From assembly GCF_963853765.1 (NCBI RefSeq), contig NC_088861.1, forward strand, positions 29,698,001 to 29,762,000: 64,000 nucleotides of DNA, written 5' to 3'. Origin of the DNA: Magallana gigas (taxonomy: Eukaryota). A program made the translations under genes and the position numbers. The notes below the pieces were generated by a model. It was not told the DNA's origin. It did no database searches and worked only from the letters and a program-made list of their open reading frames with translations. Below are positions 31,110 through 49,100 of this stretch, one piece after another (position 1 is the first letter of the stretch; every line of letters begins with the position of its first letter).

Positions 31110-31149
<40 letters not shown>

Positions 31150-34100: not shown

Positions 34101-36221
34101 CACAAAAAAATGACTTAGGGTTAAGTCTGAAATATTGTCTTAAATCTTAAGACTGCTATTAGGCAGACTTAAGTTCATAGATTGTTACTAAGTAAGTTCA
34201 AAATGGCGACACTCGTTGGATTTTTTAAGAAGAAATGATCAGCAAAGAAGGTTGCTCCCTCGTCCTTGGGTTTTCTATTTATAGTCTATAGTACTCTAGG
34301 TTTTTCCCCTTTGTGGACTTGCTATTGAAGTTATTTCCCTTTGTTAAAGTGAAAGTGTGTAAACACGTCTGTATAATGACTGATATGTTATCCAGTAAGA
34401 AACTATGCTAATATTTGTGTGAAGCATCTTTTAAATATAATTTTTTAAACTTTGTGATATATGATAATGTTTACGATGCAGCCGATAGGAATCTTCAAAC
34501 GAAGAAGAGTTCCACTTTTAACAAATTCTGTCGAAAAATCACGCGAGTTACTATGGAGTTTAGCTAAGACAAATCTTAGCTAAGTTTTTTCTTAGATCGT
34601 TTTGTGATCCACTTAAGTAAGCAATCTTAACGAAGTCTAAATCTTAGATTTAAGACAAAATTCTAACTTAAATTTAAGACAGTTTCATGATCCCGGAGCC
34701 AGGTAGATGCTACTTCTCGCTGATTAATGCCTCCAACACAAAAGGAATAGACAGATTTTTATTCATAGACATAAATAAAAATTATTTTTCATTTTTCTTA
34801 AAATTAATTTTATTTTTAAGAAATAATAAAGAAATTGGTTGGTCTTAACCTCTTTTTATGGTTGTTTCATCCACTGTATAAAATTTAAGCTCAACAGGCA
34901 TGTATTTTTGTATTTTAAATCCTACAAAGAAGGTGTTGCAGTTCCTGTGCTATTTTCCATAAAGCTGTTGCAGATATCTTCATATCATTTTTATAGGACC
35001 ATTTTATACGCGGATCAATACAAAATTTTCGGGGGGGGGGGGGGTTGCGATGAATACTGAAGTTTGCCGAAGGGTAGGGGGAGGTGGGTCCGAGGCAAAT
35101 TTTTGGTAATTTCATGGAAATTTTAAGAAATTTTAATTTTTCTGGGGCGGGGTCCTCCCCGCGACCTCCCCCCCCCCCCCCCCCCCCCCCCCCCCGTTCA
35201 AGACCCCCATGCATTAAACAAATTGGTAAATGGTTTCACTGAAAAATGTGACTGGTTTCATGGCATATCCGATTTTTGTTTCAAAGAGGCATATTTTTAA
35301 AGATTAAACTTCGAAAAAAAAACCTCCGAAGTTAAAAAACGGTGTTTTAAATCTTAACAAACTTCATCATGTCTAGTATAGCCGAGTGGTTACGCAGGAT
35401 GTCCGAATAATCACTGAGACTAACTACTTGGTATTTTTTAAATTAATTTTTGAAAAGGTAATACTCCTATTCCGATGGTTTTGAAAATAAATGATGTCGG
35501 GATAAATAAGTTTTAAAACGCTTGTTATTGTAATATTTTACATGTGTGCTGATTTTTTCAACGTTACCGACTTTGTTCACATTATAAACATTTGTAGCTG
35601 CAGATCTGTAGCTCTCTGGTTGAAAAAATTCGGATAGACAAATTGTCTATCCGATTTTTTTTTTAAACCAGAGAGCTACAGATCTGCAGCTAAAACATTT
35701 GCTGCTGAACGAGGAAGTAACGCATTAATCGATAATGTTAATGTATTTTTTTTGTAAAATATGTCGTTTTCAAAATATATATACATATTGTTCGACATCG
35801 TTAAAAGCAAGCCGTGCAATAATGTATGAATCAGCAAAATACGGATAAGTTTGTTCCAAGCACCACGGTTTATATGGATGCTATTAAAATTATTTTAAAT
35901 AACAATCAAGAGCAAAGTAACTCCTCAATTTAAACGTTTTTGAAGAGACAGAACTAGATTTATTAATTCAAAAAGCTCCAAAGAATTACATACATATTTA
36001 AAACACGATAGCAAGTAGAAATTAAATTGTTCTATGTTAATATCAAGATACATAAAGTGATCTTCCTATCTGTATGCCCGGATCTAGAAGCAGAGGGGGG
36101 TATAAAATTTCTACAAAGTACAATCATTTAATTTTTGAAATTTATTTTACTTTTAAAATTAAACGCGTACTCTACTAAAAATTCATTCGATTTATCACAC
36201 ATCGATGTATCAAGAACAGAG

Positions 36222-36286
<65 letters not shown>

Positions 36287-38783
36287 AAAACAAACGACAA
36301 GTTGACCAGGAAATGTGCATCGTCACAACGAACGCGGCATCTTTTTTAAAAATAAAACTGGACCTCTTCCCCATTAAAACTTTTCAGCGAGAACCAGTTA
36401 ACAACCTCATCATAAAGAGTTACGACTGCATATAAAGAAGTTACCACTCCATATAATAAAATGATCACATCATGTAAAGAACTGTCCTCATAATATAATG
36501 ACTCAACGACGGCATATTATAAAATTGTCACATCATATAAAGGATTTACAATTGCATGTAAAGCTTTCACCACAATACATAAAGGTTTTACCACCATACA
36601 TAATGGTTTTAATACACCATAACATGATGTCAGTACTACATATAATGAATTTATCACCTAATATCAAGAAGTTGCACTGCATAAAAGGATTTTGCAACTG
36701 CACATGAAGAGTGTACCATATAGCATAACGATTGAACAATAGTTCATTATGAGTTTAGCTCTGTATGAAATGAGTTAATCATATAATATAAAGATTTATT
36801 CATAGCATATAATGAATAAACTACTGCACATAATGATCTTACGACATAACGTAATAATATTACCACTTCATATAAAGATTTTACCCTTGAATATAATGAT
36901 GAAATAATAGTATATAATGATGTTAGCACTACATAAAATGATGTTATCACTGCATGTAATGATGTTACCACTGCATATAATGATATTACTATTGCATATA
37001 AATGAAATACCAGTTCATATAATATGAAATTGACCTTAAGGCAGCTATGGCATTCCATACGACAGCATAAAATCTTAATGTATCTAATGTATACTTCCTC
37101 AAAGCTCAACTACACTGACACCATCACAATACATGATTAGCTAGAGCAGCATATATATATATATATTGTTTTCAGAATCAAATACATATATACCAATTTC
37201 CTTATACTGCTAAGTGAATCAATATATGTAATTTAGGCATGATTCAGTGTTACCTGTAAATTTTCCAAAATGTTCGTGGCAATGGAGGTACCATAGGAAA
37301 ACCAGGAAGATCCATATGTCTCCTTCTCTTCTTTGGAAATCTGCAAAAACCAAAATCAACATTTCATGAATCAATCCATCACTGTTAAAATCACTTTATA
37401 TTGTAAATTCTTACTTAAACGCGAGGAATTCATATCGGCGTAAAAAATCGTGAGAAGCATCCTTCGCGGATTTTAAAATCTTGCCATTATTTTCTGAGAG
37501 TTGAAAACTATAAGAAATAAGGAGAAAAGTTCAACGTTTGCGAATTTATATTTTCGCGATTTGATACAAACCAGAATTAATGCGGAATTAAGTACTCGCA
37601 TAATATAAGGAATTTACAGTATTGGCCCACAGATTTTCTATTTCTTACCTTCCATTTCTCCTCCAGGGCATCGAGCATCTTCTTTTTCTTGGCTTCTTCA
37701 TATTCTTTCTCTTTTTCCTCATTAAACTGTGGATTAAGAGAGAAGAGATGTGAAAAATTACATGGCATTATTTTTTTTTTATCTATTAGTTAGATGGAGA
37801 TGTAAGGCATTTCTTAGTATTTATTATTAGGTAGATGGAGGTATATTACTGTAACAATAATTCAATGAAAATATTTCCACCTTATAACTTAATATATTTT
37901 TGACACCAAAGCAAGAATTCTACCATACATAAACAACTACTAGTAGTTGTCATGGTTACCTGGGAGTGTTTGACTGGCCCTGCCACCAAGTACAGCCTCT
38001 TCATGGAAATTACCCATGGTTCACTGCTCAGTCGATTCAGGGGAATCTTCAGCTTAATTTTTCCAATGAAACCTATCAAAAGGGTAAAACTATTGCTCAG
38101 ACTCACCAATGCATGTGATTTCAGACAGATGAAAACACTGGTAAACTAAATATACTGTATGATACAAATTTTGCATTTGCGAATTTATGCATGTATTCTC
38201 ATAATTTGATGCTAAACAGTTGAATTGCGGAATAAGTTCTCGCGTAAAATAAGGAATTTACAGTATTCTTATCCTGACTTGCAGTCTATGACAGGGAATT
38301 CTACCTGATTTGACATGCAGCGGAAGGTCCAGGCTGCTCAAGGCATCCCGCTTCAGGGGCAAGTTCTCTAACTCCACATATCCTATGGAACAATCAAAAA
38401 TTAAGATATATTTTAAGTCATTTACATTTAAAATAACAAGCTACCTTTTTGAACTATACATTATATATAGCCTTTTGAAAATGAAACTTTTGATTTTAAA
38501 GCCAATGAAAAATTACACTTTGTGTAAGATGATATTATAAATCATTATAATAATGCCTGAAAGAAAAGAACTTTTATCCAATCATTAATTATCAAGTTTG
38601 ACTTTAATCCAATCAGAAACAAGTTTGACTTTTATCCAATCAGCAGCAAGGTTGACTTTTATCCAATCAGCATCAAGGTTACATACCCTGTAGGAGAGCG
38701 ATTGAGAGCTGTTTTGTGTTGAGATTTTCCACATACTGGCCCACATAGGTGTTCAGGAGGTACGCTGCTAGTCCCTCCAACAT
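25..38783 (-). CDS. VPS13D: VPS13D (bulk lipid transport protein), 53 coding exons in window, 3' end beyond position 1
   Basis: N-terminus [33 protein letters not shown] matches the VPS13D chorein start; internal UBA domain ([15 protein letters not shown]...EAALWL) is diagnostic of the D paralogue; VAB-type motifs ([28 protein letters not shown]); all exons join in phase (sum 10,364 nt). Confidence 0.95.
439..492 (-). CDS. VPS13D: VPS13D coding exon 52
   Basis: [18 protein letters not shown]; AG/GT, phase 2-2. Confidence 0.88.
645..855. mobile_element. Tc1/mariner-type MITE
   Basis: TA-CTGTATACAGGG...CCCAGGATACAG-TA inverted ends with TA flanks; degenerate relative at ~22375-22597. Confidence 0.65.
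1123..1289 (-). CDS. VPS13D: VPS13D coding exon 51
   Basis: [17 protein letters not shown]...[21 protein letters not shown]; AG/GT. Confidence 0.94.
1758..1946 (-). CDS. VPS13D: VPS13D coding exon 50
   Basis: [13 protein letters not shown]...[13 protein letters not shown]; AG/GT. Confidence 0.92.
2390..2591 (-). CDS. VPS13D: VPS13D coding exon 49
   Basis: [11 protein letters not shown]...[22 protein letters not shown]; AG/GT. Confidence 0.93.
2884..3088 (-). CDS. VPS13D: VPS13D coding exon 48
   Basis: [25 protein letters not shown]...IHWQNV; AG/GT. Confidence 0.9.
3239..3413 (-). CDS. VPS13D: VPS13D coding exon 47
   Basis: [30 protein letters not shown]; AG/GT. Confidence 0.92.
3605..4020. 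repeat. 62-bp minisatellite (about 7 copies) containing the exon 46 3' end and donor
   Basis: TACTTAC-type anchors at ~3618, 3680, 3738, 3800, 3862, 3924, 3986. Confidence 0.9.
3993..4133 (-). CDS. VPS13D: VPS13D coding exon 46
   Basis: [33 protein letters not shown]; donor GGG|gtaagt. Confidence 0.92.
4411..4531 (-). CDS. VPS13D: VPS13D coding exon 45
   Basis: [25 protein letters not shown]; AG/GT. Confidence 0.9.
4844..4987 (-). CDS. VPS13D: VPS13D coding exon 44
   Basis: [23 protein letters not shown]; AG/GT. Confidence 0.92.
5534..5700. mobile_element. Degenerate MITE (Tc1/mariner-like)
   Basis: ACAGTTGAACTTCGATATCTCGAA...GAGATAACGAAGTTTG imperfect inverted ends. Confidence 0.45.
5733..5829 (-). 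CDS. VPS13D: VPS13D coding exon 43
   Basis: [28 protein letters not shown]; AG/GT. Confidence 0.9.
6150..6214 (-). CDS. VPS13D: VPS13D coding exon 42
   Basis: [21 protein letters not shown]; AG/GT, phase 2-1. Confidence 0.85.
6676..6875 (-). CDS. VPS13D: VPS13D coding exon 41
   Basis: [18 protein letters not shown]...[19 protein letters not shown]; AG/GT. Confidence 0.93.
7040..7215. repeat. About 50-bp degenerate tandem (3 copies) containing the exon 40 3' end and donor
   Basis: ATCTA anchors at 7086, 7136, 7186. Confidence 0.75.
7186..7358 (-). CDS. VPS13D: VPS13D coding exon 40 (UBA domain)
   Basis: [37 protein letters not shown]; donor GAT|gtaagt. Confidence 0.92.
7740..7872 (-). CDS. 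VPS13D: VPS13D coding exon 39
   Basis: [28 protein letters not shown]; AG/GT. Confidence 0.9.
8166..8405 (-). CDS. VPS13D: VPS13D coding exon 38
   Basis: STAILNFRP...LEVFSCSL...ETAQSIIDP; AG/GT. Confidence 0.92.
8698..8796 (-). CDS. VPS13D: VPS13D coding exon 37
   Basis: [33 protein letters not shown]; AG/GT. Confidence 0.9.
9206..9345 (-). CDS. VPS13D: VPS13D coding exon 36
   Basis: KEVASHDVE...[14 protein letters not shown]; AG/GT. Confidence 0.88.
9740..9964 (-). CDS. VPS13D: VPS13D coding exon 35
   Basis: [11 protein letters not shown]...FQLELHYR...[22 protein letters not shown]; AG/GT. Confidence 0.92.
10232..10460 (-). CDS. VPS13D: VPS13D coding exon 34
   Basis: [25 protein letters not shown]...SLAKLDF...DTRF; AG/GT. 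Confidence 0.92.
11035..11274 (-). CDS. VPS13D: VPS13D coding exon 33
   Basis: [49 protein letters not shown]; AG/GT. Confidence 0.93.
11379..11561. mobile_element. Tc1/mariner-type MITE
   Basis: TACAGTAAAACACGGTTATA...CGTTATAAGCGTG..CTGTA inverted ends, TA flanks. Confidence 0.55.
11810..12598 (-). CDS. VPS13D: VPS13D coding exon 32 (probable GC donor)
   Basis: [39 protein letters not shown]...; phase-0 donor CAG|gcaagt. Confidence 0.87.
12918..13098 (-). CDS. VPS13D: VPS13D coding exon 31
   Basis: [32 protein letters not shown]...[11 protein letters not shown]; AG/GT. Confidence 0.93.
13448..13700 (-). CDS. VPS13D: VPS13D coding exon 30
   Basis: [20 protein letters not shown]...[20 protein letters not shown]; AG/GT. 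Confidence 0.92.
13981..14228. repeat. 44-bp minisatellite (6 copies) containing the exon 29 3' end and donor
   Basis: GACACTTACTGGTAAGCGGGAGGCTGAC copies start at 13981, 14025, 14069, 14113, 14157, 14201. Confidence 0.95.
14210..14369 (-). CDS. VPS13D: VPS13D coding exon 29
   Basis: [31 protein letters not shown]; donor A|gtaagt. Confidence 0.9.
14420..14642. repeat. 32-bp minisatellite (about 7 copies) containing the exon 28 3' end and donor
   Basis: Unit ACATACCCTGTCATATTTCTCTGTGTTTTGAC. Confidence 0.92.
14625..14775 (-). CDS. VPS13D: VPS13D coding exon 28
   Basis: [10 protein letters not shown]...[23 protein letters not shown]; donor AGG|gtatgt. Confidence 0.9.
15068..17392 (+). mobile_element. 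Non-autonomous Helentron (HINE) carrying a ~166-bp Cg170/HindIII-like satellite array and a (GACG/GACA)n microsatellite
   Basis: 5' AACAAGAGGCCCATGGGCCACATCGCTCACCTG; about 12 tandem units (GGGCCCCAG at ~16491, 16657, 16824, 16990; AAGCTT sites); microsatellite 17277-17340; 3' stem-loop GCTCACTTGAACC-TTC-GGTTCAGGTGAGC. Confidence 0.88.
17644..19384 (-). CDS. VPS13D: VPS13D coding exon 27 (large, 1,741 nt)
   Basis: Covers ORF 17640..19370; [11 protein letters not shown]...[29 protein letters not shown]; acceptor acag| at 19385, donor GG|gtaagg. Confidence 0.93.
19445..19669. mobile_element. Tc1/mariner-type MITE
   Basis: TA-CTGTGGAATC...GATTCCACAG-TA; same family at 57927-58149. Confidence 0.75.
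19910..20048 (-). CDS. VPS13D: VPS13D coding exon 26
   Basis: [19 protein letters not shown]...[17 protein letters not shown]; AG/GT. Confidence 0.88.
20245..20378 (-). CDS. VPS13D: VPS13D coding exon 25 (3' boundary uncertain)
   Basis: [18 protein letters not shown]...; a phase-0 donor is required by exon 26; best candidate ATG|gtagag is weak. Confidence 0.7.
20768..21132 (-). CDS. VPS13D: VPS13D coding exon 24
   Basis: [16 protein letters not shown]...[12 protein letters not shown]; AG/GT. Confidence 0.9.
21437..21718 (-). CDS. VPS13D: VPS13D coding exon 23
   Basis: [22 protein letters not shown]...[24 protein letters not shown]; AG/GT. Confidence 0.93.
22166..22323 (-). CDS. VPS13D: VPS13D coding exon 22
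   Basis: [14 protein letters not shown]...ISDGDS; AG/GT. Confidence 0.87.
22942..23032 (-). CDS. VPS13D: VPS13D coding exon 21
   Basis: [30 protein letters not shown]; AG/GT. Confidence 0.9.
23573..23704 (-). CDS. VPS13D: VPS13D coding exon 20
   Basis: [21 protein letters not shown]...[13 protein letters not shown]; AG/GT. Confidence 0.92.
23835..24198. mobile_element. Non-autonomous repeat with 141-bp internal palindrome (possibly Crypton-like)
   Basis: Near-perfect arms 23835-23975 around a CGCGAAGCG loop; TTGTTATAC / GTATAACAA inverted motifs at ~23978 and ~24189. Confidence 0.6.
24555..24699 (-). CDS. VPS13D: VPS13D coding exon 19
   Basis: [13 protein letters not shown]...LYDRLYER; AG/GT. 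Confidence 0.9.
25018..25192 (-). CDS. VPS13D: VPS13D coding exon 18
   Basis: [22 protein letters not shown]...VLDLGHVHF; AG/GT. Confidence 0.92.
25525..25616 (-). CDS. VPS13D: VPS13D coding exon 17
   Basis: [31 protein letters not shown]; AG/GT. Confidence 0.9.
26085..26206 (-). CDS. VPS13D: VPS13D coding exon 16
   Basis: [24 protein letters not shown]; AG/GT. Confidence 0.9.
26300..26460. repeat. AT-rich degenerate repeat (ATTTCACAT-like units)
   Basis: Repeated AAATTCACATGAA / ATTTCACATTAA. Confidence 0.6.
26637..26791 (-). CDS. VPS13D: VPS13D coding exon 15
   Basis: ERILTLAK...[18 protein letters not shown]; AG/GT. Confidence 0.88.
26977..27155 (-). CDS. VPS13D: VPS13D coding exon 14
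   Basis: [39 protein letters not shown]; AG/GT. Confidence 0.9.
27418..27564 (-). CDS. VPS13D: VPS13D coding exon 13
   Basis: [35 protein letters not shown]; AG/GT. Confidence 0.9.
27833..28031 (-). CDS. VPS13D: VPS13D coding exon 12
   Basis: VPEPEK...[15 protein letters not shown]...NNEDL; AG/GT. Confidence 0.9.
28275..28376 (-). CDS. VPS13D: VPS13D coding exon 11
   Basis: [34 protein letters not shown]; AG/GT. Confidence 0.88.
28422..28660. repeat. Intronic direct duplication of ~120 bp
   Basis: ATGTATAAAATCAATATAAAATTCATTGTT starts at ~28426 and ~28547. Confidence 0.75.
28769..28937 (-). CDS. VPS13D: VPS13D coding exon 10
   Basis: [20 protein letters not shown]...LSPADT; AG/GT. Confidence 0.9.
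29249..29490 (-). CDS. VPS13D: VPS13D coding exon 9
   Basis: [18 protein letters not shown]...[10 protein letters not shown]; AG/GT. Confidence 0.92.
29707..29757 (-). CDS. VPS13D: VPS13D coding exon 8
   Basis: [17 protein letters not shown]; 51-nt phase 0-0 exon, AG/GT. Confidence 0.8.
30104..30223 (-). CDS. VPS13D: VPS13D coding exon 7
   Basis: [40 protein letters not shown]; AG/GT. Confidence 0.9.
30580..30696 (-). CDS. VPS13D: VPS13D coding exon 6
   Basis: [39 protein letters not shown]; AG/GT. Confidence 0.92.
31112..33178 (+). mobile_element. Head-to-tail dimer of a non-autonomous Helentron-type element inserted in the left foldback arm
   Basis: 5' hairpin AAGGTCTTCCG...CGGAAGACCTT; near-identical 3' ends CGGAAGACCTA-CTCGTTAC-TC-GTAACGAG...TCTAGTT at ~31.9 kb and ~33.17 kb; TT insertion site restored by comparison with the right arm. 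Confidence 0.8.
34011..34699. mobile_element. MITE with 3-bp CAG TSD (PIF/Harbinger-like)
   Basis: TIR GCTCCGGGATCATGAAACTGTCTTAAAT; CAG at 34008-34010 and 34700-34702; empty site TACCAGGTA is palindromic. Confidence 0.8.
35005..35214. mobile_element. GC-rich MITE with poly-G/poly-C tracts (CATGCGCGGATC family, degenerate)
   Basis: Similar to copies at 51304-51494 and 58664-58841. Confidence 0.55.
35595..35692. mobile_element. 98-bp fully palindromic mini-MITE with 9-bp TSD
   Basis: TAGCTGCAGATCTGTAGCTCTCTGGTT...AACCAGAGAGCTACAGATCTGCAGCTA; AAACATTTG at 35586-35594 and 35693-35701. Confidence 0.85.
36226..36283. repeat. (CT)n microsatellite, inverted counterpart of (GA)n at ~33810-33832
   Basis: Dinucleotide run within the foldback TIRs. 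Confidence 0.95.
37254..37340 (-). CDS. VPS13D: VPS13D coding exon 5
   Basis: [29 protein letters not shown]; AG/GT. Confidence 0.9.
37399..37621. mobile_element. Tc1/mariner-type MITE
   Basis: TATTGTAAATTCTTA...TAAGGAATTTACAGTA; partial copy at ~38155-38265. Confidence 0.6.
37649..37726 (-). CDS. VPS13D: VPS13D coding exon 4
   Basis: [26 protein letters not shown]; AG/GT. Confidence 0.9.
37960..38072 (-). CDS. VPS13D: VPS13D coding exon 3
   Basis: [37 protein letters not shown]; AG/GT. Confidence 0.92.
38305..38382 (-). CDS. VPS13D: VPS13D coding exon 2
   Basis: [26 protein letters not shown]; AG/GT, phase 1-1. Confidence 0.92.
38570..38680. repeat. 27-bp tandem repeat with CCAATCAG cores, next to the exon 1 donor
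   Basis: CCAAT at 38578, 38609, 38636, 38663. Confidence 0.8.
38687..38783 (-). CDS. VPS13D: VPS13D coding exon 1 (ATG at 38783; acceptor at 38791-38792 implies an upstream UTR exon)
   Basis: [33 protein letters not shown]; donor G|gtatgt. Confidence 0.93.
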
Positions 38784-39608
38784 GTCTCACCTGAATAAAT
38801 AAAACAGAAGGCATTTCAAAAGGACAGCACAGTCTTTTTTTTAATTAAAAATGAGATTTTTTCAAATTATCTTTTTCAAAATACAGTCATACATGCATTA
38901 CATATATGGAAGCAAACTATAATTTAATAGTAAAATATTTAGCTCAAACTAAATGACTGGTTTTTGTCATGAACATGATAAAGGTTACAAAATTTGCATA
39001 ATAATATGAGCATGAAGTTGACACATGTTATATCACATAACCTCATAAAGGCAATAATTTACCACTTCTGACATTCTGATGCTAAACCAAAATAATGATT
39101 TGAAAAAATTTCTTTCTGCAAATTTGAGTTTCACCCAAAAATGGATTTGTGTTCAAACAGAAAAGAAACAATTGGTTCAAAGGTGCAGCAGTCAGCTGCC
39201 ACTGAAGCAACAAGTGTTGCTGAATCAAGGTTGCACTGCTCACCCACAAAAAGCCACAGATAACCATAAGGAACCACATCTGTTTATAAACAACAGGAAA
39301 GGTCACTTGAGATGTTTTTAAGTAAAAGAGTCACATCCTAAATAATAATTTGACAGCAATTCTTGAACCTCTGAGGCAAGCTTTGCTGCACCTGAACATT
39401 TCATTCTGTCAAAATTCAGCAGCCATTTTGAAAGCCATGTCTGTTTTAGCAAAATTTTGTCAACAACTATCAATTTCAACAATAACATACACAAAGGTAT
39501 GAATTCTTGTATGGAAAATGATACTCTGTAAAATAGCACAGGACTATTAACACACACAAAAAGCAAATAATGTTGTATGTAAAAAGCATAATTATAAAAA
39601 ATTCTGAC

Positions 39609-40133
39609 CTTATTTTGCCTTGATACTTTACTTCCAGTGAAATCATGCAACAATGCAATTTGATCATCCTCTTCCTCTGACAAAGTCATAGTCATGAACC
39701 ATGTGCGTAAAATTGCCAATTCTCCATCAACATTGTATTTTATCAGTTTCAAATTCATGAAAATCATCATCATTCATGCATTCACTGTATCATATGAAAG
39801 CTTTGCATCATTTTTTAATGCTGCAGTCAATTGGCATGCTTTTAACAGCTTAATGATAATCAAAAGTTCAAGGCCTAAGAAGGGTTGAACCCAGTTTGCA
39901 AAAAAAAATTTGGTTAAAAATAGTGTGCAGGTTGCAATTGTTCACCATTCATTTTCGTGGTCGAGTTCAAATAAGGTACAAGTACTGTATGTAAGACCAT
40001 ATTCAATACAATGGTCTAATAAATAATTTTCAATGTCTGCAGTAAGGAAGTAGGATTCCAAATCCATGTTTATCAAAATGAGCCCTGCAAGATTTTGTAT
40101 CAGTGGCTGATTAGTAATGCAACTCATCTGCAT
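39609..40133 (-). pseudogene. Decayed coding-like frame of unknown family
   Basis: About 175 codons in one frame with only two stops (both TGA) in AT-rich DNA, ending at donor-like AAG|gtcaga; nearby exon-like pieces at ~39.1-39.3 kb and ~40.4-40.5 kb; no family recognised. Confidence 0.3.
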
Positions 40134-41831
40134 GCAGCCAGTGGCATCTCATGATCAAGGATATCTTTGAGCTCTATTGGTCAATCTTAGCAAGATTACC
40201 AAATGAATATTACATATCGTAAATTTCAATTTTCTGGTGGATGTATTACAAATATACTTAGTCTAATAACTCAAAATTTCCTGTTTTATTCAGACAGAAA
40301 ACAATTTTGAATCATAAGAGACAAATTCTTTTATAAACAGCAGTAATTGTGTATGAATGTACACATTGCATAAAACATTTGGAAAGAAAAATAAAACAAA
40401 GAAAGATGGACAGGTAAACATAAACTCAACAGAGAAGTCATCAATCAAGAAAGTATATGGATGTCTTATGAGCAATGGTTCATCGGCAAAAAGATTCATC
40501 ATAGCCTGGCAGCTGTGTAATGACTGAGTCAAATCCAGTCAATGATTATATCATATTACCTATAGCTAGCTCATCTTGACCATTTATTAAAGCTTATCTT
40601 TGCAATTGGACATCTGGACAGCAGATGACCGAGACTCAGTATATTCATGCATCCATAGTTAATATTGAATAAAATGTTACGAATGAGAGGCAACACAACA
40701 AATGTTGGAATGTTTAACTTATAAATTTTACCAGCCCCCCCCCCCCCCCTCCCCCCCCCCCAAAAAAAAAAATAAAATAAATCATACCTGTAATAATGTG
40801 TCTGTCTTTTCATACAACATGTATTGAATGACAATTAAATATGTACTATGCTGTGACAGTAAATGTATTCCAAGATTTTAACACTCTAGCAGGGATACAG
40901 AGTTGCAACATACAGTATGAAATCTATATGAAACTGATTAAGCAATTAAATTTACATCATTTATTGATTGTCTACTCACAACCCCCCTCCCTCAAATGTT
41001 TACTGGTTTTGGAATTGAATTTGGGAAAGTTATAACTAATGTTCATCTAAAATGGGTGGTAAGTCTCATTGGTATCAAGGCCAACTTTCACTTACATAGT
41101 CAAGGTGAACTTTTAACAAACTCAAATTGCAACACGCAGTACATATAGTTACAGGTATAAAGACTATATTGCTGTGCAAACTCTGCAATGATAATACATG
41201 TACAACCATCTATAATTATTCCACAAAACTGATCAACATTTCATTTTCCACCCTACATGTGGGAAGCAAAAATGTTACAGGTATTTTTGGGAGCATGTAT
41301 ATGTAATATACAAATAAAAAGGCAAATTTTATTTTTCCTCTATTAAATTAAACAGTGAGATTTCATTCATAAATGTTCTTCCATGATCAGAATTGAAGAA
41401 AAAATGCTTGGTTTCTCAATTTCATTATTAGAGACACAAATATAAATAATATATTAAGCTTTTAATTGGATCCACTCACAGATTTACCATTATATTAAAA
41501 CAGGAGAAGAAAGAAATCTTACTTTTCAATTTGTTTCTATGTCATACAACCTATTTGAAAACAATTATGCAAAAAATGAGTGAATTTTTCTCAATCTACA
41601 TGTAACTAATACTGTGCAAAATGAGAAATTTCAACAAACTCCGCTTTCTTAAATTTTAAATGTCAAAATTAATTAACATTAACTGTCTACCATTTAGTTA
41701 CTGAACATCTTGATATTCGTAGCACTAAATGTATGAAACTGTTTATGTCTTTAAAGATAGTCATTGTTCCGATGGCAAGTATTACACAAATGTGTTAAGT
41801 CAGACTTAATCAAAGAAATGTCTAATTTTCC

Positions 41832-44800
41832 TTACAGATTATACAGACGACAAGTGTTGGACACAGTGATGTGAGCAATGCTGTCCAGAGAGTCATTACG
41901 AATGGTCGCCACGGCAGACGCCACTTCTCCCAGAAACAAAGGACTGTTCTCCAGGATACCTTGTTCCTCTCCAACCAGCACCACATCTGACTCCAGCAGC
42001 AGACGGTCATCTGGAACCGCGCGAAGTCCTTTCATTTGTTGCTCGTCAAAGTCCAAAACTCTTCTGGTAAATCCGAAATAGCAGTTTGGAAAATCTTCCA
42101 GCCATTCTCTAACCATGACCTCCCCACCTTTGAAATTGCAAAGATGGATGTGTTGCTCTGGACTACAATGCCGTCTGACAAGGTCGCGTACTCTTGACCC
42201 CACATCGAAACTGTAAGGGTCTCCATGGGGACCAGTGACCTTCAAAATCATTGGTTGGGCCGGTGTGCTGAGGGTCAGAAGCTGTCTAAATTTCATTTCT
42301 TGTTCCATCCATAGCTCCTTGTCTCCTGATCTATCCAAACCAATGTCGCCGAATGCAGCGTCTGCGCTATTGGTCAGAACACTCACTGCCTCAAACTCTT
42401 CCTGCAGAAGGCCAGGGGCAGCCGAAGCATCGACTCCAAAACAATTCCTCCACCCAGGATAGTTGGGAAAACCTCCCAAGGCAAAGGACTTCGGGTTGCT
42501 ATATACTACAGTGCCACCTATGATGTCAACTGGTACGTTTGGTCGAGCATGAACGGCTAAATTTGACAGCAGTTCAGAGGGATTGATTTCCGAGACATTG
42601 AACATCATACACAAACGTCCGAAGTAGAAATGGCTGTCCATTAAAGATATTCTCTGTGGAAGCCGTGGTTCTTTAAAAGGTATGGGCAACACCTGCCTAT
42701 CAAAGTCTGGAGGAGGTGTTTTTCTACGATACCCCTCCAATTCCTGATGAGACAGGCTGTATTCCTGGTCTCTATATTCAGGGAAATCCCTATCATCATT
42801 GAAAGCAGTGTTAAAATTCCTTGTTTCCTCTTCATACCCTTGATTACCATAGTTAAAATCCTCTTCTAAGCTCCTGCTGGTCTGCTGGACATTTTCGGCT
42901 TTTTTTCCCACCAAATTCAATCCTTTCTGATGGGGATTTTTCACGTCTTCTAGACTTAGACCATTAATAGTGGCTTTAGCAAATGAGGATTTGAACAGCT
43001 TCTGAAAACGGACTGACACATATTTCAAGAGGCCCAGTAGGGCTCTCCAGTGGAGAAGAATAGCTGGACTATTTGGTGGCCAAATGGAAAACTGGTGAGG
43101 TATCTGCAGCCCTTGGTGCTGACATAGAGCCCTCATGCTGACCTCCATGGATGGTGTGATTTTAGCCTCCTGAGGCATGATGTTTTTGCTTCTGAAAAAC
43201 TCCAACAGATCCTCAATATGCGCATCAGGACTAAGTACAAAGGTGGTTAAATTTCGCAGACTTTTCCATCGCATGCTGTGGAGATTAGGATCAGAAATTG
43301 GAAGATCCACATCGAATATTTTTGGGAGGTGAAATTTGTAGGCATGGTCTTTTAAATCCGTTGTCTGAAAACAATTCGGCACAGGACAAGTGGTGAGAGC
43401 ATTAAGTCTCTTAATCTGACGATCGATTCTACGGGCTTCATAATTCTTCTTTATCTTTCTCTGCCCTTTCCTTTCTCTTCTTTTTCTCTTTTTCTGAGCT
43501 ATTCGTCTCCTTTTTCGCACTTGAGAACTGGACAAACCTCTGTTGCGTAAATTTGAGGCAACACTGTTTTGCTGTTCCTCTTCTTCAGTTTCACTGTGAC
43601 TACAAGATGAGACATCCTCGTCTAGATCTTTCTTTGAACCAACTGTTTGAAACAAAGGCTCTTGCTCTACTCCTCCACCTGTTCGACGAGTTTGCTCGTA
43701 ATCAAAAACTCTGATTTGATCAGATCCCATATCTGGATTGATATCATGATATGAATTTGAGCCTCTGCTACTGTGAAAACCTTTAGCCTGATTTTCAAAA
43801 GTTTTAAACCTTGACTCTCTGCTCTCTTCAGTTTGAGAGATACTAAATGACTGAGATGGAAAGGGTGCCATAGTCTGCTGCATATTTTGCCCCCTTTGTT
43901 GCTGCATATTTTGTTGCCCTTGTTGCTGCATATTTTGTTGCCCTTGTTGCTGCATATTTTGTTGGCCTTGTTGCTGTTGCTTTGTGTTCTTTAATAATTC
44001 CCATTCAAATTCCAGCCCCTCTGCATGGAAAAGATTTCGGAATTCCCCTCGCTGAACAGGAGTGATGTACTGCAGCAGACAAGACAGGGCTTTCCAGTGA
44101 AGCAGTAATGCTGGACTGTTGACAGTATGAAGAACAAAAACCTCTGGTTCACTGTATCCATAGTGACGGCAAAACGCCCTGAACGACTCGTCCATTTTGT
44201 CTGAGATGGGCATGCCCTGAGGAAGGACATTCTGGTTCCTTAAAAATCTACACAGGTCATCAAGATTTGAAGTGTTCCCCAGAATAGACATTGTTAATTC
44301 TTTCAAGGCTCGCATGCGCAGTTCATGCAAGGCAGGATTATCCACAGAGAAACTCGTGTTAAAAATTTTTGGGAGGTGACATTTCATCATGTGTTCCTTG
44401 TTACTGCCAACTTTCTCATGGCAATCTGACAAAGAGCACTTTTTATAATTCTTATTCAATGTCTTTGAATTATTCATACTTTGTGACCCATTAGACTGTT
44501 GTGAACTGTTGCCAATATTAGGTTTTCTTGTGTTTTGGATATTGCTTGACAATGTATTCTTCTGCTGAGAGGCCTGTACATGTTCATGCCTTTTGCCAAC
44601 ATACATCGCTTGACTGGTCCCTGATTGGCCAGTTTGTGACCTTTGACTTGCACAGCTGAACACAGGCTGGTGAGAACTTTGAACAGTTGAAGGCTGCATA
44701 GACTGAGATCTTGGTTGGTCTCCTAGATATCCCTGCTGATGACTCTGATAAATGTTGTCTGGCTTCTGTCCCAATAACCCAGTTCTACCTGACGAAATAT

Positions 44801-45353
44801 TTCCTCTTCCTTGCCCCCACTGTGTTTGCTGGAACATCTGACTTCTTTGCCCATGGTTCTGTGGATTAATCCCCAGAATGGCACCACCTTGGCCTTGTAG
44901 ATTAGCCATCACACCTGCACCACCAACTCTTGGAAACCTTGGTGCCTGCTGGTTTGGTCCTCGGTTCATTGTGTTAAAATCTTGTTGACTTGGCTCTGGC
45001 ACAGCATGGGATGGTCTAGTGTATGCAGGAATTCCAGGTCTGGGGTTCTCAAATCTGGTACCATATCCATAGGCTGGTTGGGATGATACTGTGTTTGGTC
45101 CAGGACCTGCATTCAATGAGTTTTGCTGATGGAATCCCAAACTGCCTTGATGTTGATGATAGGCTTGCAGCGATTGGTTAGAATAGGTCATGTGATGCTG
45201 TCCTTGGTTGGGATTAGGAACACTCTGCCTAGAGCTATGATAGGATGGATTCACCACTGAGGCGTTCAGAACACCAACCCTCTTAGAGTTTGGATACTGC
45301 TGTCTCACATTGGGAACACTGTGTGTATATTGCATATAGTTTCTATCCATCAT
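41832..45353 (-). CDS. Intronless 1,173-aa protein: Q/N/G/S-rich disordered region, two Cys2/His2-type repeats, basic tract, C-terminal degenerate TatD-like nuclease fold
   Basis: Uninterrupted 3.5-kb ORF; TatD motifs recognisable as DSHFY, GDIGLDR, IHLCNF, WLEDFPNCYFGF, VPDDRLLLESD, NTCRLY; internal duplication C-x4-C...H-x4-HLPKIF...SPA-LLHW-AL. Confidence 0.85.
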   Translation of the reverse strand: MMDRNYMQYTHSVPNVRQQYPNSKRVGVLNASVVNPSYHSSRQSVPNPNQGQHHMTYSNQSLQAYHQHQGSLGFHQQNSLNAGPGPNTVSSQPAYGYGTRFENPRPGIPAYTRPSHAVPEPSQQDFNTMNRGPNQQAPRFPRVGGAGVMANLQGQGGAILGINPQNHGQRSQMFQQTQWGQGRGNISSGRTGLLGQKPDNIYQSHQQGYLGDQPRSQSMQPSTVQSSHQPVFSCASQRSQTGQSGTSQAMYVGKRHEHVQASQQKNTLSSNIQNTRKPNIGNSSQQSNGSQSMNNSKTLNKNYKKCSLSDCHEKVGSNKEHMMKCHLPKIFNTSFSVDNPALHELRMRALKELTMSILGNTSNLDDLCRFLRNQNVLPQGMPISDKMDESFRAFCRHYGYSEPEVFVLHTVNSPALLLHWKALSCLLQYITPVQRGEFRNLFHAEGLEFEWELLKNTKQQQQGQQNMQQQGQQNMQQQGQQNMQQQRGQNMQQTMAPFPSQSFSISQTEESRESRFKTFENQAKGFHSSRGSNSYHDINPDMGSDQIRVFDYEQTRRTGGGVEQEPLFQTVGSKKDLDEDVSSCSHSETEEEEQQNSVASNLRNRGLSSSQVRKRRRIAQKKRKRRERKGQRKIKKNYEARRIDRQIKRLNALTTCPVPNCFQTTDLKDHAYKFHLPKIFDVDLPISDPNLHSMRWKSLRNLTTFVLSPDAHIEDLLEFFRSKNIMPQEAKITPSMEVSMRALCQHQGLQIPHQFSIWPPNSPAILLHWRALLGLLKYVSVRFQKLFKSSFAKATINGLSLEDVKNPHQKGLNLVGKKAENVQQTSRSLEEDFNYGNQGYEEETRNFNTAFNDDRDFPEYRDQEYSLSHQELEGYRRKTPPPDFDRQVLPIPFKEPRLPQRISLMDSHFYFGRLCMMFNVSEINPSELLSNLAVHARPNVPVDIIGGTVVYSNPKSFALGGFPNYPGWRNCFGVDASAAPGLLQEEFEAVSVLTNSADAAFGDIGLDRSGDKELWMEQEMKFRQLLTLSTPAQPMILKVTGPHGDPYSFDVGSRVRDLVRRHCSPEQHIHLCNFKGGEVMVREWLEDFPNCYFGFTRRVLDFDEQQMKGLRAVPDDRLLLESDVVLVGEEQGILENSPLFLGEVASAVATIRNDSLDSIAHITVSNTCRLYNL

Positions 45354-45499
45354 TATGTCTTTTGATTATTTCACCAATCACCAGTTCTTATTTGCAGAGG
45401 ACAGTAAAATGTTTAAGAATGGCATAAATTTACTTATTGCTCAAAACTGCTTGTTATCAGCTTTTGGTTAATTTAACATTCAGTAGGTAAGAATCCTAC

Positions 45500-45562
45500 C
45501 TTTATCTGTAAAATGTCCCACCGGCTAGTTGGGAAACTTTACTGCTTCTCTCAAATTGATCA
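45500..45562 (-). other. Putative non-coding 5' exon
   Basis: Pyrimidine-rich acceptor cctttttatttttag| and donor AAG|gtagga; 113-nt intron to a candidate acceptor at 45387 ahead of the TatD-like ATG. Confidence 0.5.
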
Positions 45563-46030
45563 CTAAAAATAAAAAGGATGAGAATGAAGTACATGTATCT
45601 GATCTATAGTACCATCATTCCAACATAAAAAAAAAACCACACACACAAAGGAGAAACAGATGTTGCTTGCAATCAATGTTAAATATCACCAGTGAAACTT
45701 CCATCAAGGGATATTAGGATAAGAGACAAAGCACATAATCAGTTTTATCAGTCAATATCAGCCAGTTAATCGAAATATTTTCTCTTGACATTCAAAGCTA
45801 ATATAAAAATAAAAATTTCAATAATAAATAAAAATTCAGCTTATTCAAACATATTCTTGTATAAAATATTTTTTGAAATATAATTCTAGTATAGTGATTA
45901 AATCATGTACAGGCAATTCATCAATTTTTTGGTGTAAATGACCCATAATTTCAGTCCTAGCTTGAATCAACGAAAAAGAAAATGGTCCTGTAAAACACGG
46001 CAACAAATCTAGCCCAGTAAATACACATAC

Positions 46031-46100
46031 CGGCAGAGAGAATATCTTCATTTGAAAGGCACGTACTTGCAACAGAGTTTTCATTTTCATACCTTAAATC
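46031..46100 (-). other. Putative first exon (start approximate)
   Basis: Donor CCG|gtatgt at 46030; CpG dinucleotides become visibly more frequent upstream (>46.3 kb). Confidence 0.35.
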
Positions 46101-49100
46101 TCGTTATTAATAATTTTTTTTTTCTAGTAAATTTTTTAATCGGTAACTCAGTCCCATGTCAAAACGTTATTACACTCTTGTAAAAAAATACTTGGGCTCA
46201 GTTTGATAAATAATTTAATATTATACATTAGATGTTAACTTTTATTTCATATGTTCAATAGTTATCATGGTTATATCATGTAACACATCAAATATTAATA
46301 ACAACAAACTCCATACACCCTATCATAAAAATAATTAAACTTTGCAACTAGATCCTTTACCGCGTATATGGACCCATGCAGGTTCTGCTTTCCATCACTT
46401 TAAGGTGAATTAGAAAAAAAAAACTTTTCATTTTAGAAAGACTGAAATCAATGAAAAAAAATATGTCTTCTACAAGGACATGTTATCTGAAGGTATTGAC
46501 AAAAACGAAAACAATATTCTATAAAACGGATTTACAATGGGAAAACACTCTAGTCTATAACCATTTCAATGAGTTGGATCAAGCAAATTTATATAAAATC
46601 ACACAATTATAGATGTTCCATTTATCTCATACAGTTTGTTTAATATTATGAAGCTTTTGAGACCGCCCCTTTTTTTGACCCGAATGTATTTGTTTCAAAG
46701 ATTAAACTATGATGCAACGTTGTGTTATGCGGTTATTGTGACCATGCGCAATACAATATAGTGTGTCATTTCAGAGATAAATATAACTGATTTAATGTAA
46801 AGTTTTACTAAACTAAATCTTGAAACAATTTTTTATTTTAAAATATTTTTCTTGAAGTTCAATCACTAAATTAAATGAAAATACTGATCAGAACAAGTTT
46901 GAATGTTTCAAAATTTAATCTTACAATTAAGGGTGCAATGATAAACTGTCAGACAGTATATCACGGTAAAAATATGCTATGGTTCAATGTCATGATACAG
47001 TAAGCTATACCGCGGTTCAGTATTTCGATCTGGAATATATTTATCCCTCCGATACGGATTGAAAATATTTTTTTTTTTAAATGGCTTCTGGTTTTGAAAA
47101 ACGTGCTTCGCACTATTTAATTTTGCCCCCTGCTACAGTGCATCTCATAACTCTTCGATATGGTAACATTTTTCGTTTTGTGGGATAAACGAAATTGGTT
47201 AATAACAAAGTTCCCAAATTGAGGGTTTCTACATGCAAGTAGTTTAGTACCTTTTTCAGACGATTTTCCTACGCGGGCATGTTAAGGCTTCCCGATGCGA
47301 CATGTAGAAAGTCACTTGTCTGTACTTCATACGATATGACGTCATAATTAACTTTGACGTCATGATCTGCATTCCTGTCGATAGTTCTCAGGGAATGTAT
47401 CTTAACGTTAAAAGTGAATTATATCAAACCAGTATAATACCGCATGTTTCCTTTATATAGATGCTGCAGTTAATTCTAGACGTACAGAATTCATTCATAT
47501 AAAAAACCAGTATCAAATAATCGGCAGTTTTAAAGCTTCGTTTTAAGTAAAAGACTATTTATAAACTAGTGGTTTGGAAACTCTCCCTGCTACGTGTAAA
47601 CAACTGAATGAAGAAATTTTAATGCATGTAAAACCAGCTTGGCGCAGGTGAAAGATCAACACAATTTTAGAATATTTTACGTAAAATTGGTAGAGAATAT
47701 AAGTACCAATGTGAATCGTGCTGCGGAAACCTACGGATTTACCCCAATTCTGTGTAAATCGCTTTTGATTAGTAAAAATGTGCATTATTTTGATGATTTT
47801 GTGGAATGTTTCAACAATATCTTCTATAAACGAAATATCTATTTCTTTCCCAAGCAAGAACTTCAAAGTTTATGACTTAACAAAGGATTTTTCTTAAAAA
47901 TATGTATGATTTAATGTCATTAATCACCTGCGCCGATGCGTTTTAACTAGATCATTTGCAATATTAGGATTCGCCTGTCACGTGATTATGAATTACATGT
48001 GACGTCACAAAAATGCATCAAATATAATGTTTAACATCGATGTCAATAAATGTAACATAGATTTAAAGAAATACTCCCGGTAAAATTATTTTTGCCATGA
48101 TTCAAATAATATCGTTTTCCAGCCGTATTTTAGCATCGGGACGCCTTAACAATGCTGCGTACAAACAAACGACATGTGTATTGCACCTCGTATAAAACAG
48201 CATTTATCCATACATTTGTCTGTTGTCACAAGAAATTAATGCCACTTTCCTAGATGTGCAAAAAATTAAATTAAAGGTCACCCTAGTCATTAAATATTTT
48301 GTCTTCAGAAAATTCATTACATCTATATAAATAAGAGCATAAATAATTTGATTGTTGTCAGTGTTGAAATAACGATATTGATGCCAACATTATATTTTAC
48401 CTTATGCAGATCATGTTGACATTCTGATATTTATACAGCTGATTAAGAAAAAATATGTGGAAAAAAAATATGTAACTAAAAGCTGGAGATTAAACAATAT
48501 CAAAATATGCGTAATTTGTTTATTTATTATTTTTAAAAGCACATCAAAATCATCACGATACATATCGTATCATATTGTCTGTATCATGATACATATCGTA
48601 TCGTGAGGCAAGTGTTTCGTTGCACCCCTACTTACAATAATATATATATCTAAAAACAAACGATGTTTATAACTGTGCTCATGCTCCCTGAAAAGACTTA
48701 GTGTGTTATAGGAAATTGAACATCACAGATTTTCCAATGCAAACATAAGAGGAAATGTATACACTGAATGTAAATATTTAATACATAATGTATATTTTGT
48801 ATATATTTTTTAGGTGGTGAAAAAATGACGAAACCATACCCTGGTGAGAAATAGTCTTACGCCAGTACACTTTTACCATATTATATTTATTTGCCATAAA
48901 AATTAAATAACAATATTTTTCATGATTTTGGGAAGCTAAAGAGAAGCACACTAAAAAGTCAATATTATCATGATTACTGAACACGATGAACTATATGAAA
49001 GATGGCATTAGCACACACATGTCCAATTTAATGTATAGTTTAAATTGATACATACATTGATTGTTTTTTCCCCAATGACTTTTATGATTTCCCCCCTTTT

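What the first reader, a model, noticed from the sequence alone, without database searches (positions are those of the whole stretch)
38790..46100. TatD-like gene may sit in VPS13D's first intron and share its 5' exons
Seen: the VPS13D ATG exon begins at an acceptor (38791), so a UTR exon lies upstream. The 39-45 kb interval looks CpG-poor (judged by eye, not counted) and shows no obvious promoter. Exon-like segments at 45500-45562 and ending at 46031 lie above the same-strand TatD-like ORF, and CpGs reappear above ~46.3 kb. Inference: one promoter yields either the TatD-like mRNA (splice to ~45386) or VPS13D (splice to 38790), an alternative-terminal-exon arrangement reminiscent of CSB-PGBD3 that would couple the two genes.
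Basis: inference. Interest (0 to 1): 0.7.

Follow-up and report, generated by a model that had tools for sequence, protein, structure and literature searches.

The report
TatD-like gene nested in VPS13D's 5'UTR intron
In this oyster genome a complete, intronless TatD-like gene sits inside the 6.7-kb intron that separates a short non-coding exon of VPS13D from its start-codon exon; RNA reads prove the splice that jumps over it, but whether the two genes share one promoter is still open.

Summary
All features are on the minus strand. In three stranded poly(A)+ RNA runs, 18 reads that cover the VPS13D ATG exon (38790-38686) continue upstream into letters that match only 45502-45531. That is the 3' end of the predicted exon 45562-45500. 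The two mismatches are natural alleles of that exon. The intron 45499-38791 (6,709 nt, GT..AG) therefore holds the whole TatD-like ORF (45353-41832, 1,173 aa, dN/dS about 0.2). No read joins anything between 38.8 and 44.3 kb to 38790.

CpG depletion is real: obs/exp is 0.14-0.37 from 38.8 to 46.0 kb and about 1 above 46.0 kb. Saccostrea has the same gene order, a short exon-like segment 63 nt before its TatD ATG, and an acceptor 7 nt before its VPS13D ATG. A third oyster genus has the exon-like segment 109 nt before the ATG. Pinctada has no TatD-like ORF there.

Three parts are not shown: the TatD mRNA's 5' structure, the transcription start site, and the exon said to end at 46031, which has only conservation and the CpG boundary behind it. 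The proposed splice to about 45386 is disfavoured. The closest analogue is the ChAT/VAChT cholinergic locus, not CSB-PGBD3. UniProt K1Q973 wrongly fuses the two genes. This is a new member of a known kind, of moderate interest.

The parts
38686..38790 (-). VPS13D first coding exon (ATG at 38783-38781, encoding [33 protein letters not shown]). Its acceptor is 7 nt upstream of the ATG.
   Evidence: 100% tblastn match to C. gigas VPS13D residues 1-33. The joint to 38383 and the loose ends at 38792 are.
38303..38383 (-). VPS13D second coding exon
   Evidence: Joint 38381/38686 in 9/7/6 reads and one RNA contig. The loose end at 38303 matches the next exon at 38041-38070.
38791..45499 (-). VPS13D 5'UTR intron, 6,709 nt, GT..AG, containing the whole TatD-like gene
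   Evidence: 18 junction reads in 3 runs. The loose-end consensus maps uniquely to 45502-45531. No other joint to 38790 was reported.
45500..45562 (-). Non-coding VPS13D mini-exon, 63 nt, with no ATG. The donor is AAAG|GTAGGATT. The 3' end is proven and the 5' end is inferred.
   Evidence: The alleles seen in the reads equal the natural alleles of this exon in contigs L015, L018 and L001. It is 92% conserved against L005. Analogous short exon-like segments occur in Saccostrea and a third genus.
45354..45499 (-). 146-nt stretch between the mini-exon donor and the TatD-like ATG. It is probably the TatD 5' leader, and it forms the start of the VPS13D intron.
   Evidence: 93% identity to L005 against 66-75% in neutral flanks. 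It holds 2 upstream ATGs, neither of them conserved in L005.
41832..45353 (-). Intronless TatD-like ORF, 1,173 aa, with a C-terminal TatD fold at residues 983-1172
   Evidence: dN/dS is 0.18-0.22 against four relatives. Minus-strand poly(A)+ read depth is 0.6-3.0x, which is 2-3x the depth of the intron below it.
40200..41831 (-). Zone in which the TatD-like mRNA must end. Candidate signals are ATTAAA at 41466 and AATAAA at 41333, 40965, 40588 and 40290. The site actually used is not determined.
   Evidence: for the signals. Patchy RNA cover reaches down to about 40.3 kb in X1 and X20.
46032..46100 (-). Candidate VPS13D first exon with donor CCG|GTATGT (inferred only)
   Evidence: Conservation peak of 87% (46100-51: 92%) with GT kept in L005. 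The CpG-depletion boundary lies just below it. No read evidence.
45950..46000 (.). Boundary between the CpG-depleted zone (below) and the CpG-normal zone (above)

Best explanation
Shown: VPS13D in this oyster has at least one non-coding exon (45562-45500, minus strand). It is spliced across a 6,709-nt intron to the start-codon exon at 38790. A complete, selectively maintained, intronless TatD-like gene (45353-41832) lies in that intron on the same strand. Every VPS13D pre-mRNA must therefore be transcribed through the whole TatD-like gene and its poly(A) signals, and must then remove it by splicing.

Inferred: transcription starts about 46.0-46.1 kb, with a candidate first exon 46100-46032 at the CpG-depletion boundary. 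The TatD-like mRNA would arise from the same or overlapping primary transcripts when the 45500 donor is not used and the RNA is cleaved and polyadenylated inside the intron (a composite terminal exon, i.e. intronic polyadenylation). On this reading, splicing 45500->38790 and intronic polyadenylation are competing fates that set the TatD-like to VPS13D ratio. The layout is the same as that of the cholinergic gene locus.
For: - Junction: 18 reads in 3 stranded poly(A)+ runs. Their overhang maps uniquely to 45502-45531 and carries known alleles of that exon.
- No competing joint into 38790 from 38.8-44.3 kb.
- All reads are first-mate-on-plus, meaning minus-strand RNA. This includes the cover over the TatD ORF, which is 2-3x the cover of the intron below it.
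- The ORF is intact in five taxa, with dN/dS 0.18-0.22.
- The mini-exon-like segment with its G|GTAGGATT donor motif sits 147, 63 and 109 nt before the TatD ATG in three genera, and the acceptor 7 nt before the VPS13D ATG is kept in Saccostrea.
- The mini-exon and the 146-nt leader are 92-93% conserved, against 66-75% in the flanks.
- CpG obs/exp stays at 0.1-0.4 right across the TatD 5' flank and recovers only above 46.0 kb, so there is no separate CpG-retaining patch at the TatD 5' end.
- The unspliced stretch 45563-46031 holds 12 ATGs, while the mini-exon holds none. This is compatible with a spliced leader.
Against: - No reads were laid on 44.3-46.7 kb, so three things are unobserved: read-through of the 45500 donor into the TatD ORF, the 46031->45562 junction, and the transcription start site.
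- TatD depth is low (0.6-3x against about 9-19 reads on VPS13D exons), so part of it could be retained intron.
- In the total-RNA run X1, the intron contigs (depth 3.6-9.9) are nearly as deep as the ORF contigs (6-12.9).
- The high conservation of the mini-exon plus leader would fit a dedicated TatD core promoter equally well.
- The contigs colinear with 46585-40754 (L001-3, L020-29) are identical across 13 runs. They are most likely DNA of one individual and say nothing about splicing.
Confidence: 0.6

Rival explanations
1. A classical nested gene with its own promoter. The TatD-like mRNA starts inside the VPS13D intron, or in or next to the mini-exon, downstream of or around 45500. The two genes then share DNA but not a promoter, and coupling is limited to transcriptional interference.
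For: The mini-exon and the 146-nt leader are the best-conserved non-coding DNA of the locus, as a core promoter plus short 5'UTR would be. A leader starting further upstream would carry many upstream ATGs (12 in 45563-46031). VAChT, the analogue, also has its own promoters inside ChAT's first intron (PMC3053374, its reference 44).
Against: There is no CpG-retaining patch at the TatD 5' end (1 CpG per 200 nt against 5-10 expected). The donor is kept within 63-147 nt of the TatD ATG in three genera, and independent promoters would not require that proximity.
Confidence: 0.3
2. One promoter serves both genes, and the mini-exon donor at 45500 splices either to a proximal acceptor near 45386 (TatD-like mRNA, a skipped-terminal-exon type) or to 38790 (VPS13D).
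For: An AG preceded by a moderate pyrimidine run exists at 45388-45387. C. elegans unc-17/cha-1 uses this kind of choice (my own knowledge).
Against: The putative 113-nt intron is 93% conserved, like exon sequence. In Saccostrea the space between donor and ATG is 63 nt. In the third genus the only good AG would give a 29-nt intron. It was not testable with reads here.
Confidence: 0.08
3. A TatD-like-VPS13D fusion protein, as in the 2012 C. gigas gene model K1Q973. That model joins ...ITVSNT to MLEGLAAY... through a donor in the last TatD codons and an AG 5 nt inside the ATG exon.
For: The UniProt/UniRef entry K1Q973 (P0007, 3,567 aa) exists and sits in the same 90% cluster.
Against: No joint from about 41.85 kb to about 38.785 kb was reported in any of the four runs, at a threshold of 3 reads and 5% share. 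All 18 informative reads come from 45500. The later Gnomon model XP_011455888.1 starts at MLEGLAAY. The TatD ORF ends in a conserved stop after ...CRLYNL in all five taxa.
Confidence: 0.02

Closest known systems
Cholinergic gene locus (the VAChT/SLC18A3 ORF inside the first intron of ChAT; unc-17/cha-1 in C. elegans)
   Same: A single-exon ORF lies on the same strand, wholly inside the host intron between non-coding 5' exon(s) and the host's first coding exon. The arrangement is conserved across taxa. Two different proteins are made, with no fusion (PMC3053374).
   Different: The gene pair has no known functional relation (a TatD-fold protein and a lipid-transfer protein). The arrangement has so far been seen only in true oysters. 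Sharing of the 5' exon by the nested mRNA is documented for VAChT but not shown here.
Intronic polyadenylation / composite terminal exon isoforms
   Same: On the favoured reading, the choice between using a 5' splice site and using a poly(A) site inside the downstream intron decides which mRNA is made.
   Different: Typical intronic polyadenylation truncates the host protein. Here the host's upstream exons are non-coding, and the intronic unit encodes an unrelated, conserved 1,173-aa protein.
CSB-PGBD3
   Same: A foreign ORF in a host intron on the same strand, with alternative processing of host transcripts.
   Different: CSB-PGBD3 is an in-frame fusion of host coding exons to a domesticated transposase through a 3' splice site. 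Here there is no coding fusion, no transposase, and no evidence of an acceptor in front of the ORF.
UniProt K1Q973 / C. gigas 2012 gene model named 'VPS13D'
   Same: It covers the same two adjacent ORFs in the sister species (96% amino-acid identity for the TatD-like part).
   Different: It joins them into one 3,567-aa protein. The reads here show that VPS13D splices over the TatD-like ORF instead, so that model is a chimera.

Membership tests
Same-strand nested gene in a host 5'UTR intron (cholinergic-locus type) | The nested ORF lies entirely within a host intron that separates a non-coding exon from the first coding exon | tested here: met
   The junction 45500|38790 comes from 18 reads. 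The ORF 45353-41832 lies inside it. The mini-exon has no ATG, and a TGA sits 6 nt before the VPS13D ATG.
Same-strand nested gene in a host 5'UTR intron (cholinergic-locus type) | Same transcriptional orientation | tested here: met
   Both are on the minus strand, and all RNA reads are first-mate-on-plus.
Same-strand nested gene in a host 5'UTR intron (cholinergic-locus type) | The nested coding region is a single exon | tested here: met
   An uninterrupted 1,173-aa ORF that is colinear with intact ORFs of 1,102-1,164 aa in four relatives. The only joint reported inside 41.8-44.3 kb is a 48-nt in-frame repeat-number variant with CC..GG ends.
Same-strand nested gene in a host 5'UTR intron (cholinergic-locus type) | The nested mRNA shares the host's 5' non-coding exon(s) or promoter | not tested
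   No reads were laid on 44.3-46.7 kb (only one read-laying run of at most 6,000 nt). The only support is indirect: conservation, the CpG profile, and donor-to-ATG proximity in three genera.
Same-strand nested gene in a host 5'UTR intron (cholinergic-locus type) | The arrangement is conserved in related taxa | tested here: met
   Saccostrea echinata: TatD-like at 10001-13330, then the VPS13D ATG at 15785 on the same strand, with an exon-like segment at 9872-9937. C. gigas: K1Q973 and contigs L020-29. A third genus has the exon-like segment. Absent within 10 kb upstream of, and inside, Pinctada VPS13D.
CSB-PGBD3-type host-transposase fusion | Host coding exons are spliced in frame to the intronic ORF, giving a fusion protein | tested here: not met
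   The exons upstream of the ORF are non-coding. No Pfam transposase domain was found, only TatD_DNase. No acceptor use in front of the ORF could be examined.
TatD_DNase (PF01026) | Significant match to the family profile | tested here: met
   E=1.5e-13, 51.2 bits against a cut-off of 27, but only profile positions 70-253 of 253 are matched. There is a weak PDB match to YcfH, 1yix.
TatD_DNase (PF01026) | N-terminal HxH metal-binding motif of the fold (from my own knowledge of the family) | tested here: not met
Where the motif is expected, the sequence reads ...LMDSHFYFG... in the window and in C. gigas. The first 69 profile positions are unmatched.
VPS13D | Chorein/VPS13 N-terminus followed by colinear VPS13D exons | tested here: met
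   C. gigas VPS13D (XP_011455888.1) aligns exon by exon from 38783 down to 11023. The Saccostrea neighbour has VPS13_N, VPS13_M, VAB and UBA domains.

The most novel reading that the evidence does not exclude
The TatD-like and VPS13D mRNAs are mutually exclusive products of one promoter. Each primary transcript either uses the 45500 donor, giving VPS13D, or is polyadenylated in the intron, giving the TatD-like mRNA. This switch would have been kept throughout the true oysters. It would be a non-neuronal counterpart of the cholinergic locus, and it would imply a functional link between a metal-site-degenerate TatD-fold protein and VPS13D-dependent membrane and mitochondrial homeostasis.
Probability: 0.3. 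Interest if true: 0.55.

Novelty: new member of a known kind. Interest (0 to 1): 0.38.

Why it matters
- It fixes the gene structure of a large, medically studied lipid-transfer gene (VPS13D) in oysters.
- It shows that a conserved 1,173-aa gene is hidden in VPS13D's 5'UTR intron. Annotation pipelines have fused this gene to VPS13D (UniProt K1Q973), or may have omitted it: only one named standalone protein, from Saccostrea, turned up in the search.
- If the shared-promoter reading holds, the locus would be a simple natural system for studying competition between splicing and intronic polyadenylation in a mollusc. It would also make expression of the two genes interdependent, which matters for any knock-down or expression study of either gene.

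Tried and rejected
1. I first took the Logan contigs L001-3 (colinear with 45940-41456, ending just after an ATTAAA) as unspliced TatD mRNAs. I withdrew this. They are 100% identical to ten longer contigs (46585-40754) from 13 runs of two series. They are therefore most likely DNA of one individual, with ends set by a T/G homopolymer and a graph branch.

2. An exact look-up of the window's TatD protein found nothing on record.

3. A look-up of the 81-aa ORF 46090-45845 returned ten contigs. All are colinear by construction and of unknown library type, so they are uninformative.

4. Attempts to reach oyster VPS13D mRNA contigs that carry a 5'UTR all failed.
- The exon-1 peptide is too short for the word search.
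- P0009:1-220 found no oyster fragment.
- P0007 region 1157-1500 found no oyster representative, apparently because the oyster VPS13D sequences sit in the cluster represented by the TatD-like protein.

5. A search for the run accessions in papers found nothing.

6. Non-coding similarity between the window and Saccostrea upstream regions is nil apart from a shared TGACGTCA. The CRE pair at 47344/47362 is therefore only a lead.

7. The scallop VPS13D locus is not on record.

Exons were referred to singly, and stored proteins were used by id.
Full report
**What is there.** All features are on the minus strand. An uninterrupted 1,173-aa ORF runs from 45353 to 41832. Its C-terminal 190 residues match Pfam TatD_DNase (E=1.5e-13, profile positions 70-253 only). 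Three kilobases further down lies a VPS13 N-terminal exon at 38790-38686 (ATG at 38783, encoding [33 protein letters not shown]). It is preceded by a pyrimidine run and CAG. The C. gigas VPS13D protein aligns exon by exon from 38783 down to about 11 kb.

**The key test.** One read-laying run was allowed, limited to 6,000 nt, so the full span from 38790 to 45562 could not be covered. I used three stranded poly(A)+ raw-read runs plus one RNA contig set from the same organism.
- Controls worked. The joint 38686->38383 appears in 9, 7 and 6 reads and in one contig. The loose end at 38303 matches the next VPS13D exon exactly.
- At the acceptor, 3+8+7 reads stop matching at 38792 and continue with a 30-letter consensus. 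That consensus matches the window once only, at 45502-45531, with two mismatches (no match in 100 shuffles).
- The two mismatches, and a third variant seen in run X21, are the same alleles that occur at this exon in other contigs of this and the sister species (L015, L018, L001, L010). The overhang is therefore this exon and not a look-alike.
- The apparent 2-nt shift is the CT shared by both sides. The junction is 45500|38790, and the intron 45499-38791 starts with GT and ends with AG.
- No joint from anywhere in 38.8-44.3 kb into 38790 was reported, at a threshold of 3 reads and 5% share.
- All reads have the first mate on the plus strand, as expected for minus-strand RNA in a stranded library.

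The TatD-like ORF thus lies wholly inside a 6,709-nt VPS13D 5'UTR intron. The mini-exon holds no ATG, and a TGA lies 6 nt before the VPS13D ATG, so no fusion protein results.

**The TatD-like gene is real.**
- It is intact in C. gigas (96% amino-acid identity), in a relative at 90%, in Saccostrea echinata (59%) and in a third genus (57%).
- dN/dS is 0.18-0.22 in every comparison.
- Minus-strand poly(A)+ cover over 41.7-44.3 kb averages 2.2, 3.0 and 0.6x in the three runs. The intron below it averages 1.1, 0.9 and 0x, and VPS13D exons carry roughly 9-19 reads.
- That fits a low-abundance mRNA that ends inside the intron. The depth is thin, however, and in the total-RNA run X1 the intron contigs are almost as deep as the ORF contigs.
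- The 3' end is not resolved. Candidate signals lie at 41466, 41333, 40965, 40588 and 40290.

| Interval | CpG obs/exp |
|---|---|
| 38791-41831 | 0.14 |
| TatD ORF | 0.37 |
| 45354-45999 | 0.28 |
| 46000-47000 | 0.73 |
| 47001-48200 | 1.35 |

The step lies at about 45.95-46.0 kb. From established knowledge of mosaic gene-body methylation in invertebrates, this pattern suggests a transcription unit that is methylated in the germline and begins near 46 kb. There is no separate unmethylated patch at the TatD 5' end. This is inference.

**Upstream structure (inferred).**
- The mini-exon has a strong acceptor at 45563/45562, so at least one more exon should lie upstream.
- Against a relative at dS 0.26 (L005), identity is 92% in the mini-exon, 93% in the 146 nt between the donor and the TatD ATG, and 89.5% in the ORF. 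It is 87% in 46100-46032 (92% in 46100-46051), against 66-75% elsewhere.
- The block 46100-46032 ends in CCG|GTATGT, and the GT is kept in L005. It sits right at the CpG step.
- A CpG-rich patch with two TGACGTCA palindromes at 47344 and 47362 is an alternative promoter candidate.

**Comparative evidence.**
- In Saccostrea echinata the TatD-like CDS (10001-13330) is followed on the same strand by the VPS13D ATG at 15785.
- An acceptor lies 7 nt before that ATG, exactly as in the window.
- A 66-nt exon-like segment with acceptor and donor (CTGAG|GTAGGATTT) ends 63 nt before the TatD ATG.
- A third genus (L006) has a 61-nt equivalent with the same donor motif, 109 nt before the ATG.
- In Pinctada imbricata no TatD-like ORF occurs in the 10 kb upstream of VPS13D or inside it.
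- The arrangement thus looks specific to, and conserved within, true oysters.

**How the TatD-like mRNA is made.** This could not be observed, so I rank three models.
1. Shared or overlapping primary transcripts that skip the 45500 donor and are polyadenylated in the intron (composite terminal exon). This is favoured. The donor stays within 63-147 nt of the TatD ATG in three genera, the intervening leader is conserved like exon sequence, and the CpG profile shows no separate promoter.
2. An own promoter at or just below the mini-exon. This is a serious rival, because the same conservation could reflect a core promoter. VAChT likewise has promoters inside ChAT's first intron (PMC3053374).
3. 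This is disfavoured by the conservation of the would-be intron and by the lack of room for an intron in the other genera.

**A correction of my own.** I first read contigs L001-3 as unspliced mRNAs. They are identical, base for base, to ten longer contigs from 13 runs. They are most likely DNA of one sequenced individual, so they carry no information on splicing.

**Known counterparts.**
- The closest is the cholinergic gene locus. There the single-exon VAChT ORF lies in the first intron of ChAT, on the same strand, conserved from nematodes to mammals, with multiple promoters and alternative splicing (PMC3053374).
- CSB-PGBD3 differs in the defining point, which is an in-frame fusion to host coding exons.
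- The C. gigas 2012 gene model K1Q973 (3,567 aa, named VPS13D) fuses the TatD-like ORF to VPS13D through a predicted splice. None of the reads supports that joint, and the later Gnomon model starts at MLEGLAAY. The fusion is best taken as an annotation chimera.

**Verdict.** This is a new member of a known kind (a same-strand nested gene in a 5'UTR intron), of moderate interest.

Noticed in passing
window 43918-43965: One RNA contig of run X1 skips 48 nt (ends CC..GG, so not a splice) inside the QQGQQNMQ repeat of the TatD-like ORF. It is an in-frame repeat-number variant. Relatives also differ in length here (1,159-1,173 aa).
   Followed up: partly
window 39100-39700: Minus-strand poly(A)+ reads (X21 depth 4-4.6, X20 about 1.5) and a 353-nt RNA contig lie in the VPS13D intron below the TatD gene. 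They overlap a 151-aa ORF (39773-39318) that has no Pfam match. No joints to it were seen. It could be an unannotated exon, a repeat-derived RNA, or retained intron.
   Followed up: partly
window 40735-40775: A T11 G10 A G16 homopolymer run. The read tool skipped it as a repeat, and all ten C. gigas contigs end raggedly there (40754-40793).
   Followed up: yes
P0007 (UniRef100_K1Q973, Magallana gigas): A public protein named VPS13D is a chimera of the TatD-like ORF (minus its last 6 residues) and VPS13D. Because of it, oyster VPS13D sequences sit in a 90% cluster whose representative is the TatD-like protein, which hides them from length-filtered searches.
   Followed up: yes
window 47000-48200: A CpG-rich patch (obs/exp 1.35) holds two TGACGTCA palindromes 18 nt apart at 47344 and 47362, and a third at 48007. 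Saccostrea has one TGACGTCA in a CpG-normal patch about 4 kb upstream of its mini-exon. This is a possible promoter or enhancer of the locus.
   Followed up: partly
window 31000-36500: Inside the VPS13D gene body, between coding exons at 37.2 and 30.7 kb, CpG obs/exp is about 1.0-1.3. The rest of the gene is depleted (0.48 for 1-30000). This may be an unmethylated island, possibly a young insertion or an internal regulatory region.
   Followed up: no
window 53432-55078 (+): A 548-aa single-exon ORF with an N-terminal B-box zinc finger (Pfam E=6.8e-6) and a long C-terminal region. It looks like a TRIM-like gene of the kind expanded in bivalves.
   Followed up: partly
P0019 (285 aa, C. gigas-cluster contig): A TatD-like variant that follows the normal sequence up to ...GDIGLDRS and then diverges into 15 unrelated residues. 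It may be an insertion haplotype or a chimeric contig.
   Followed up: no
   Followed up: partly
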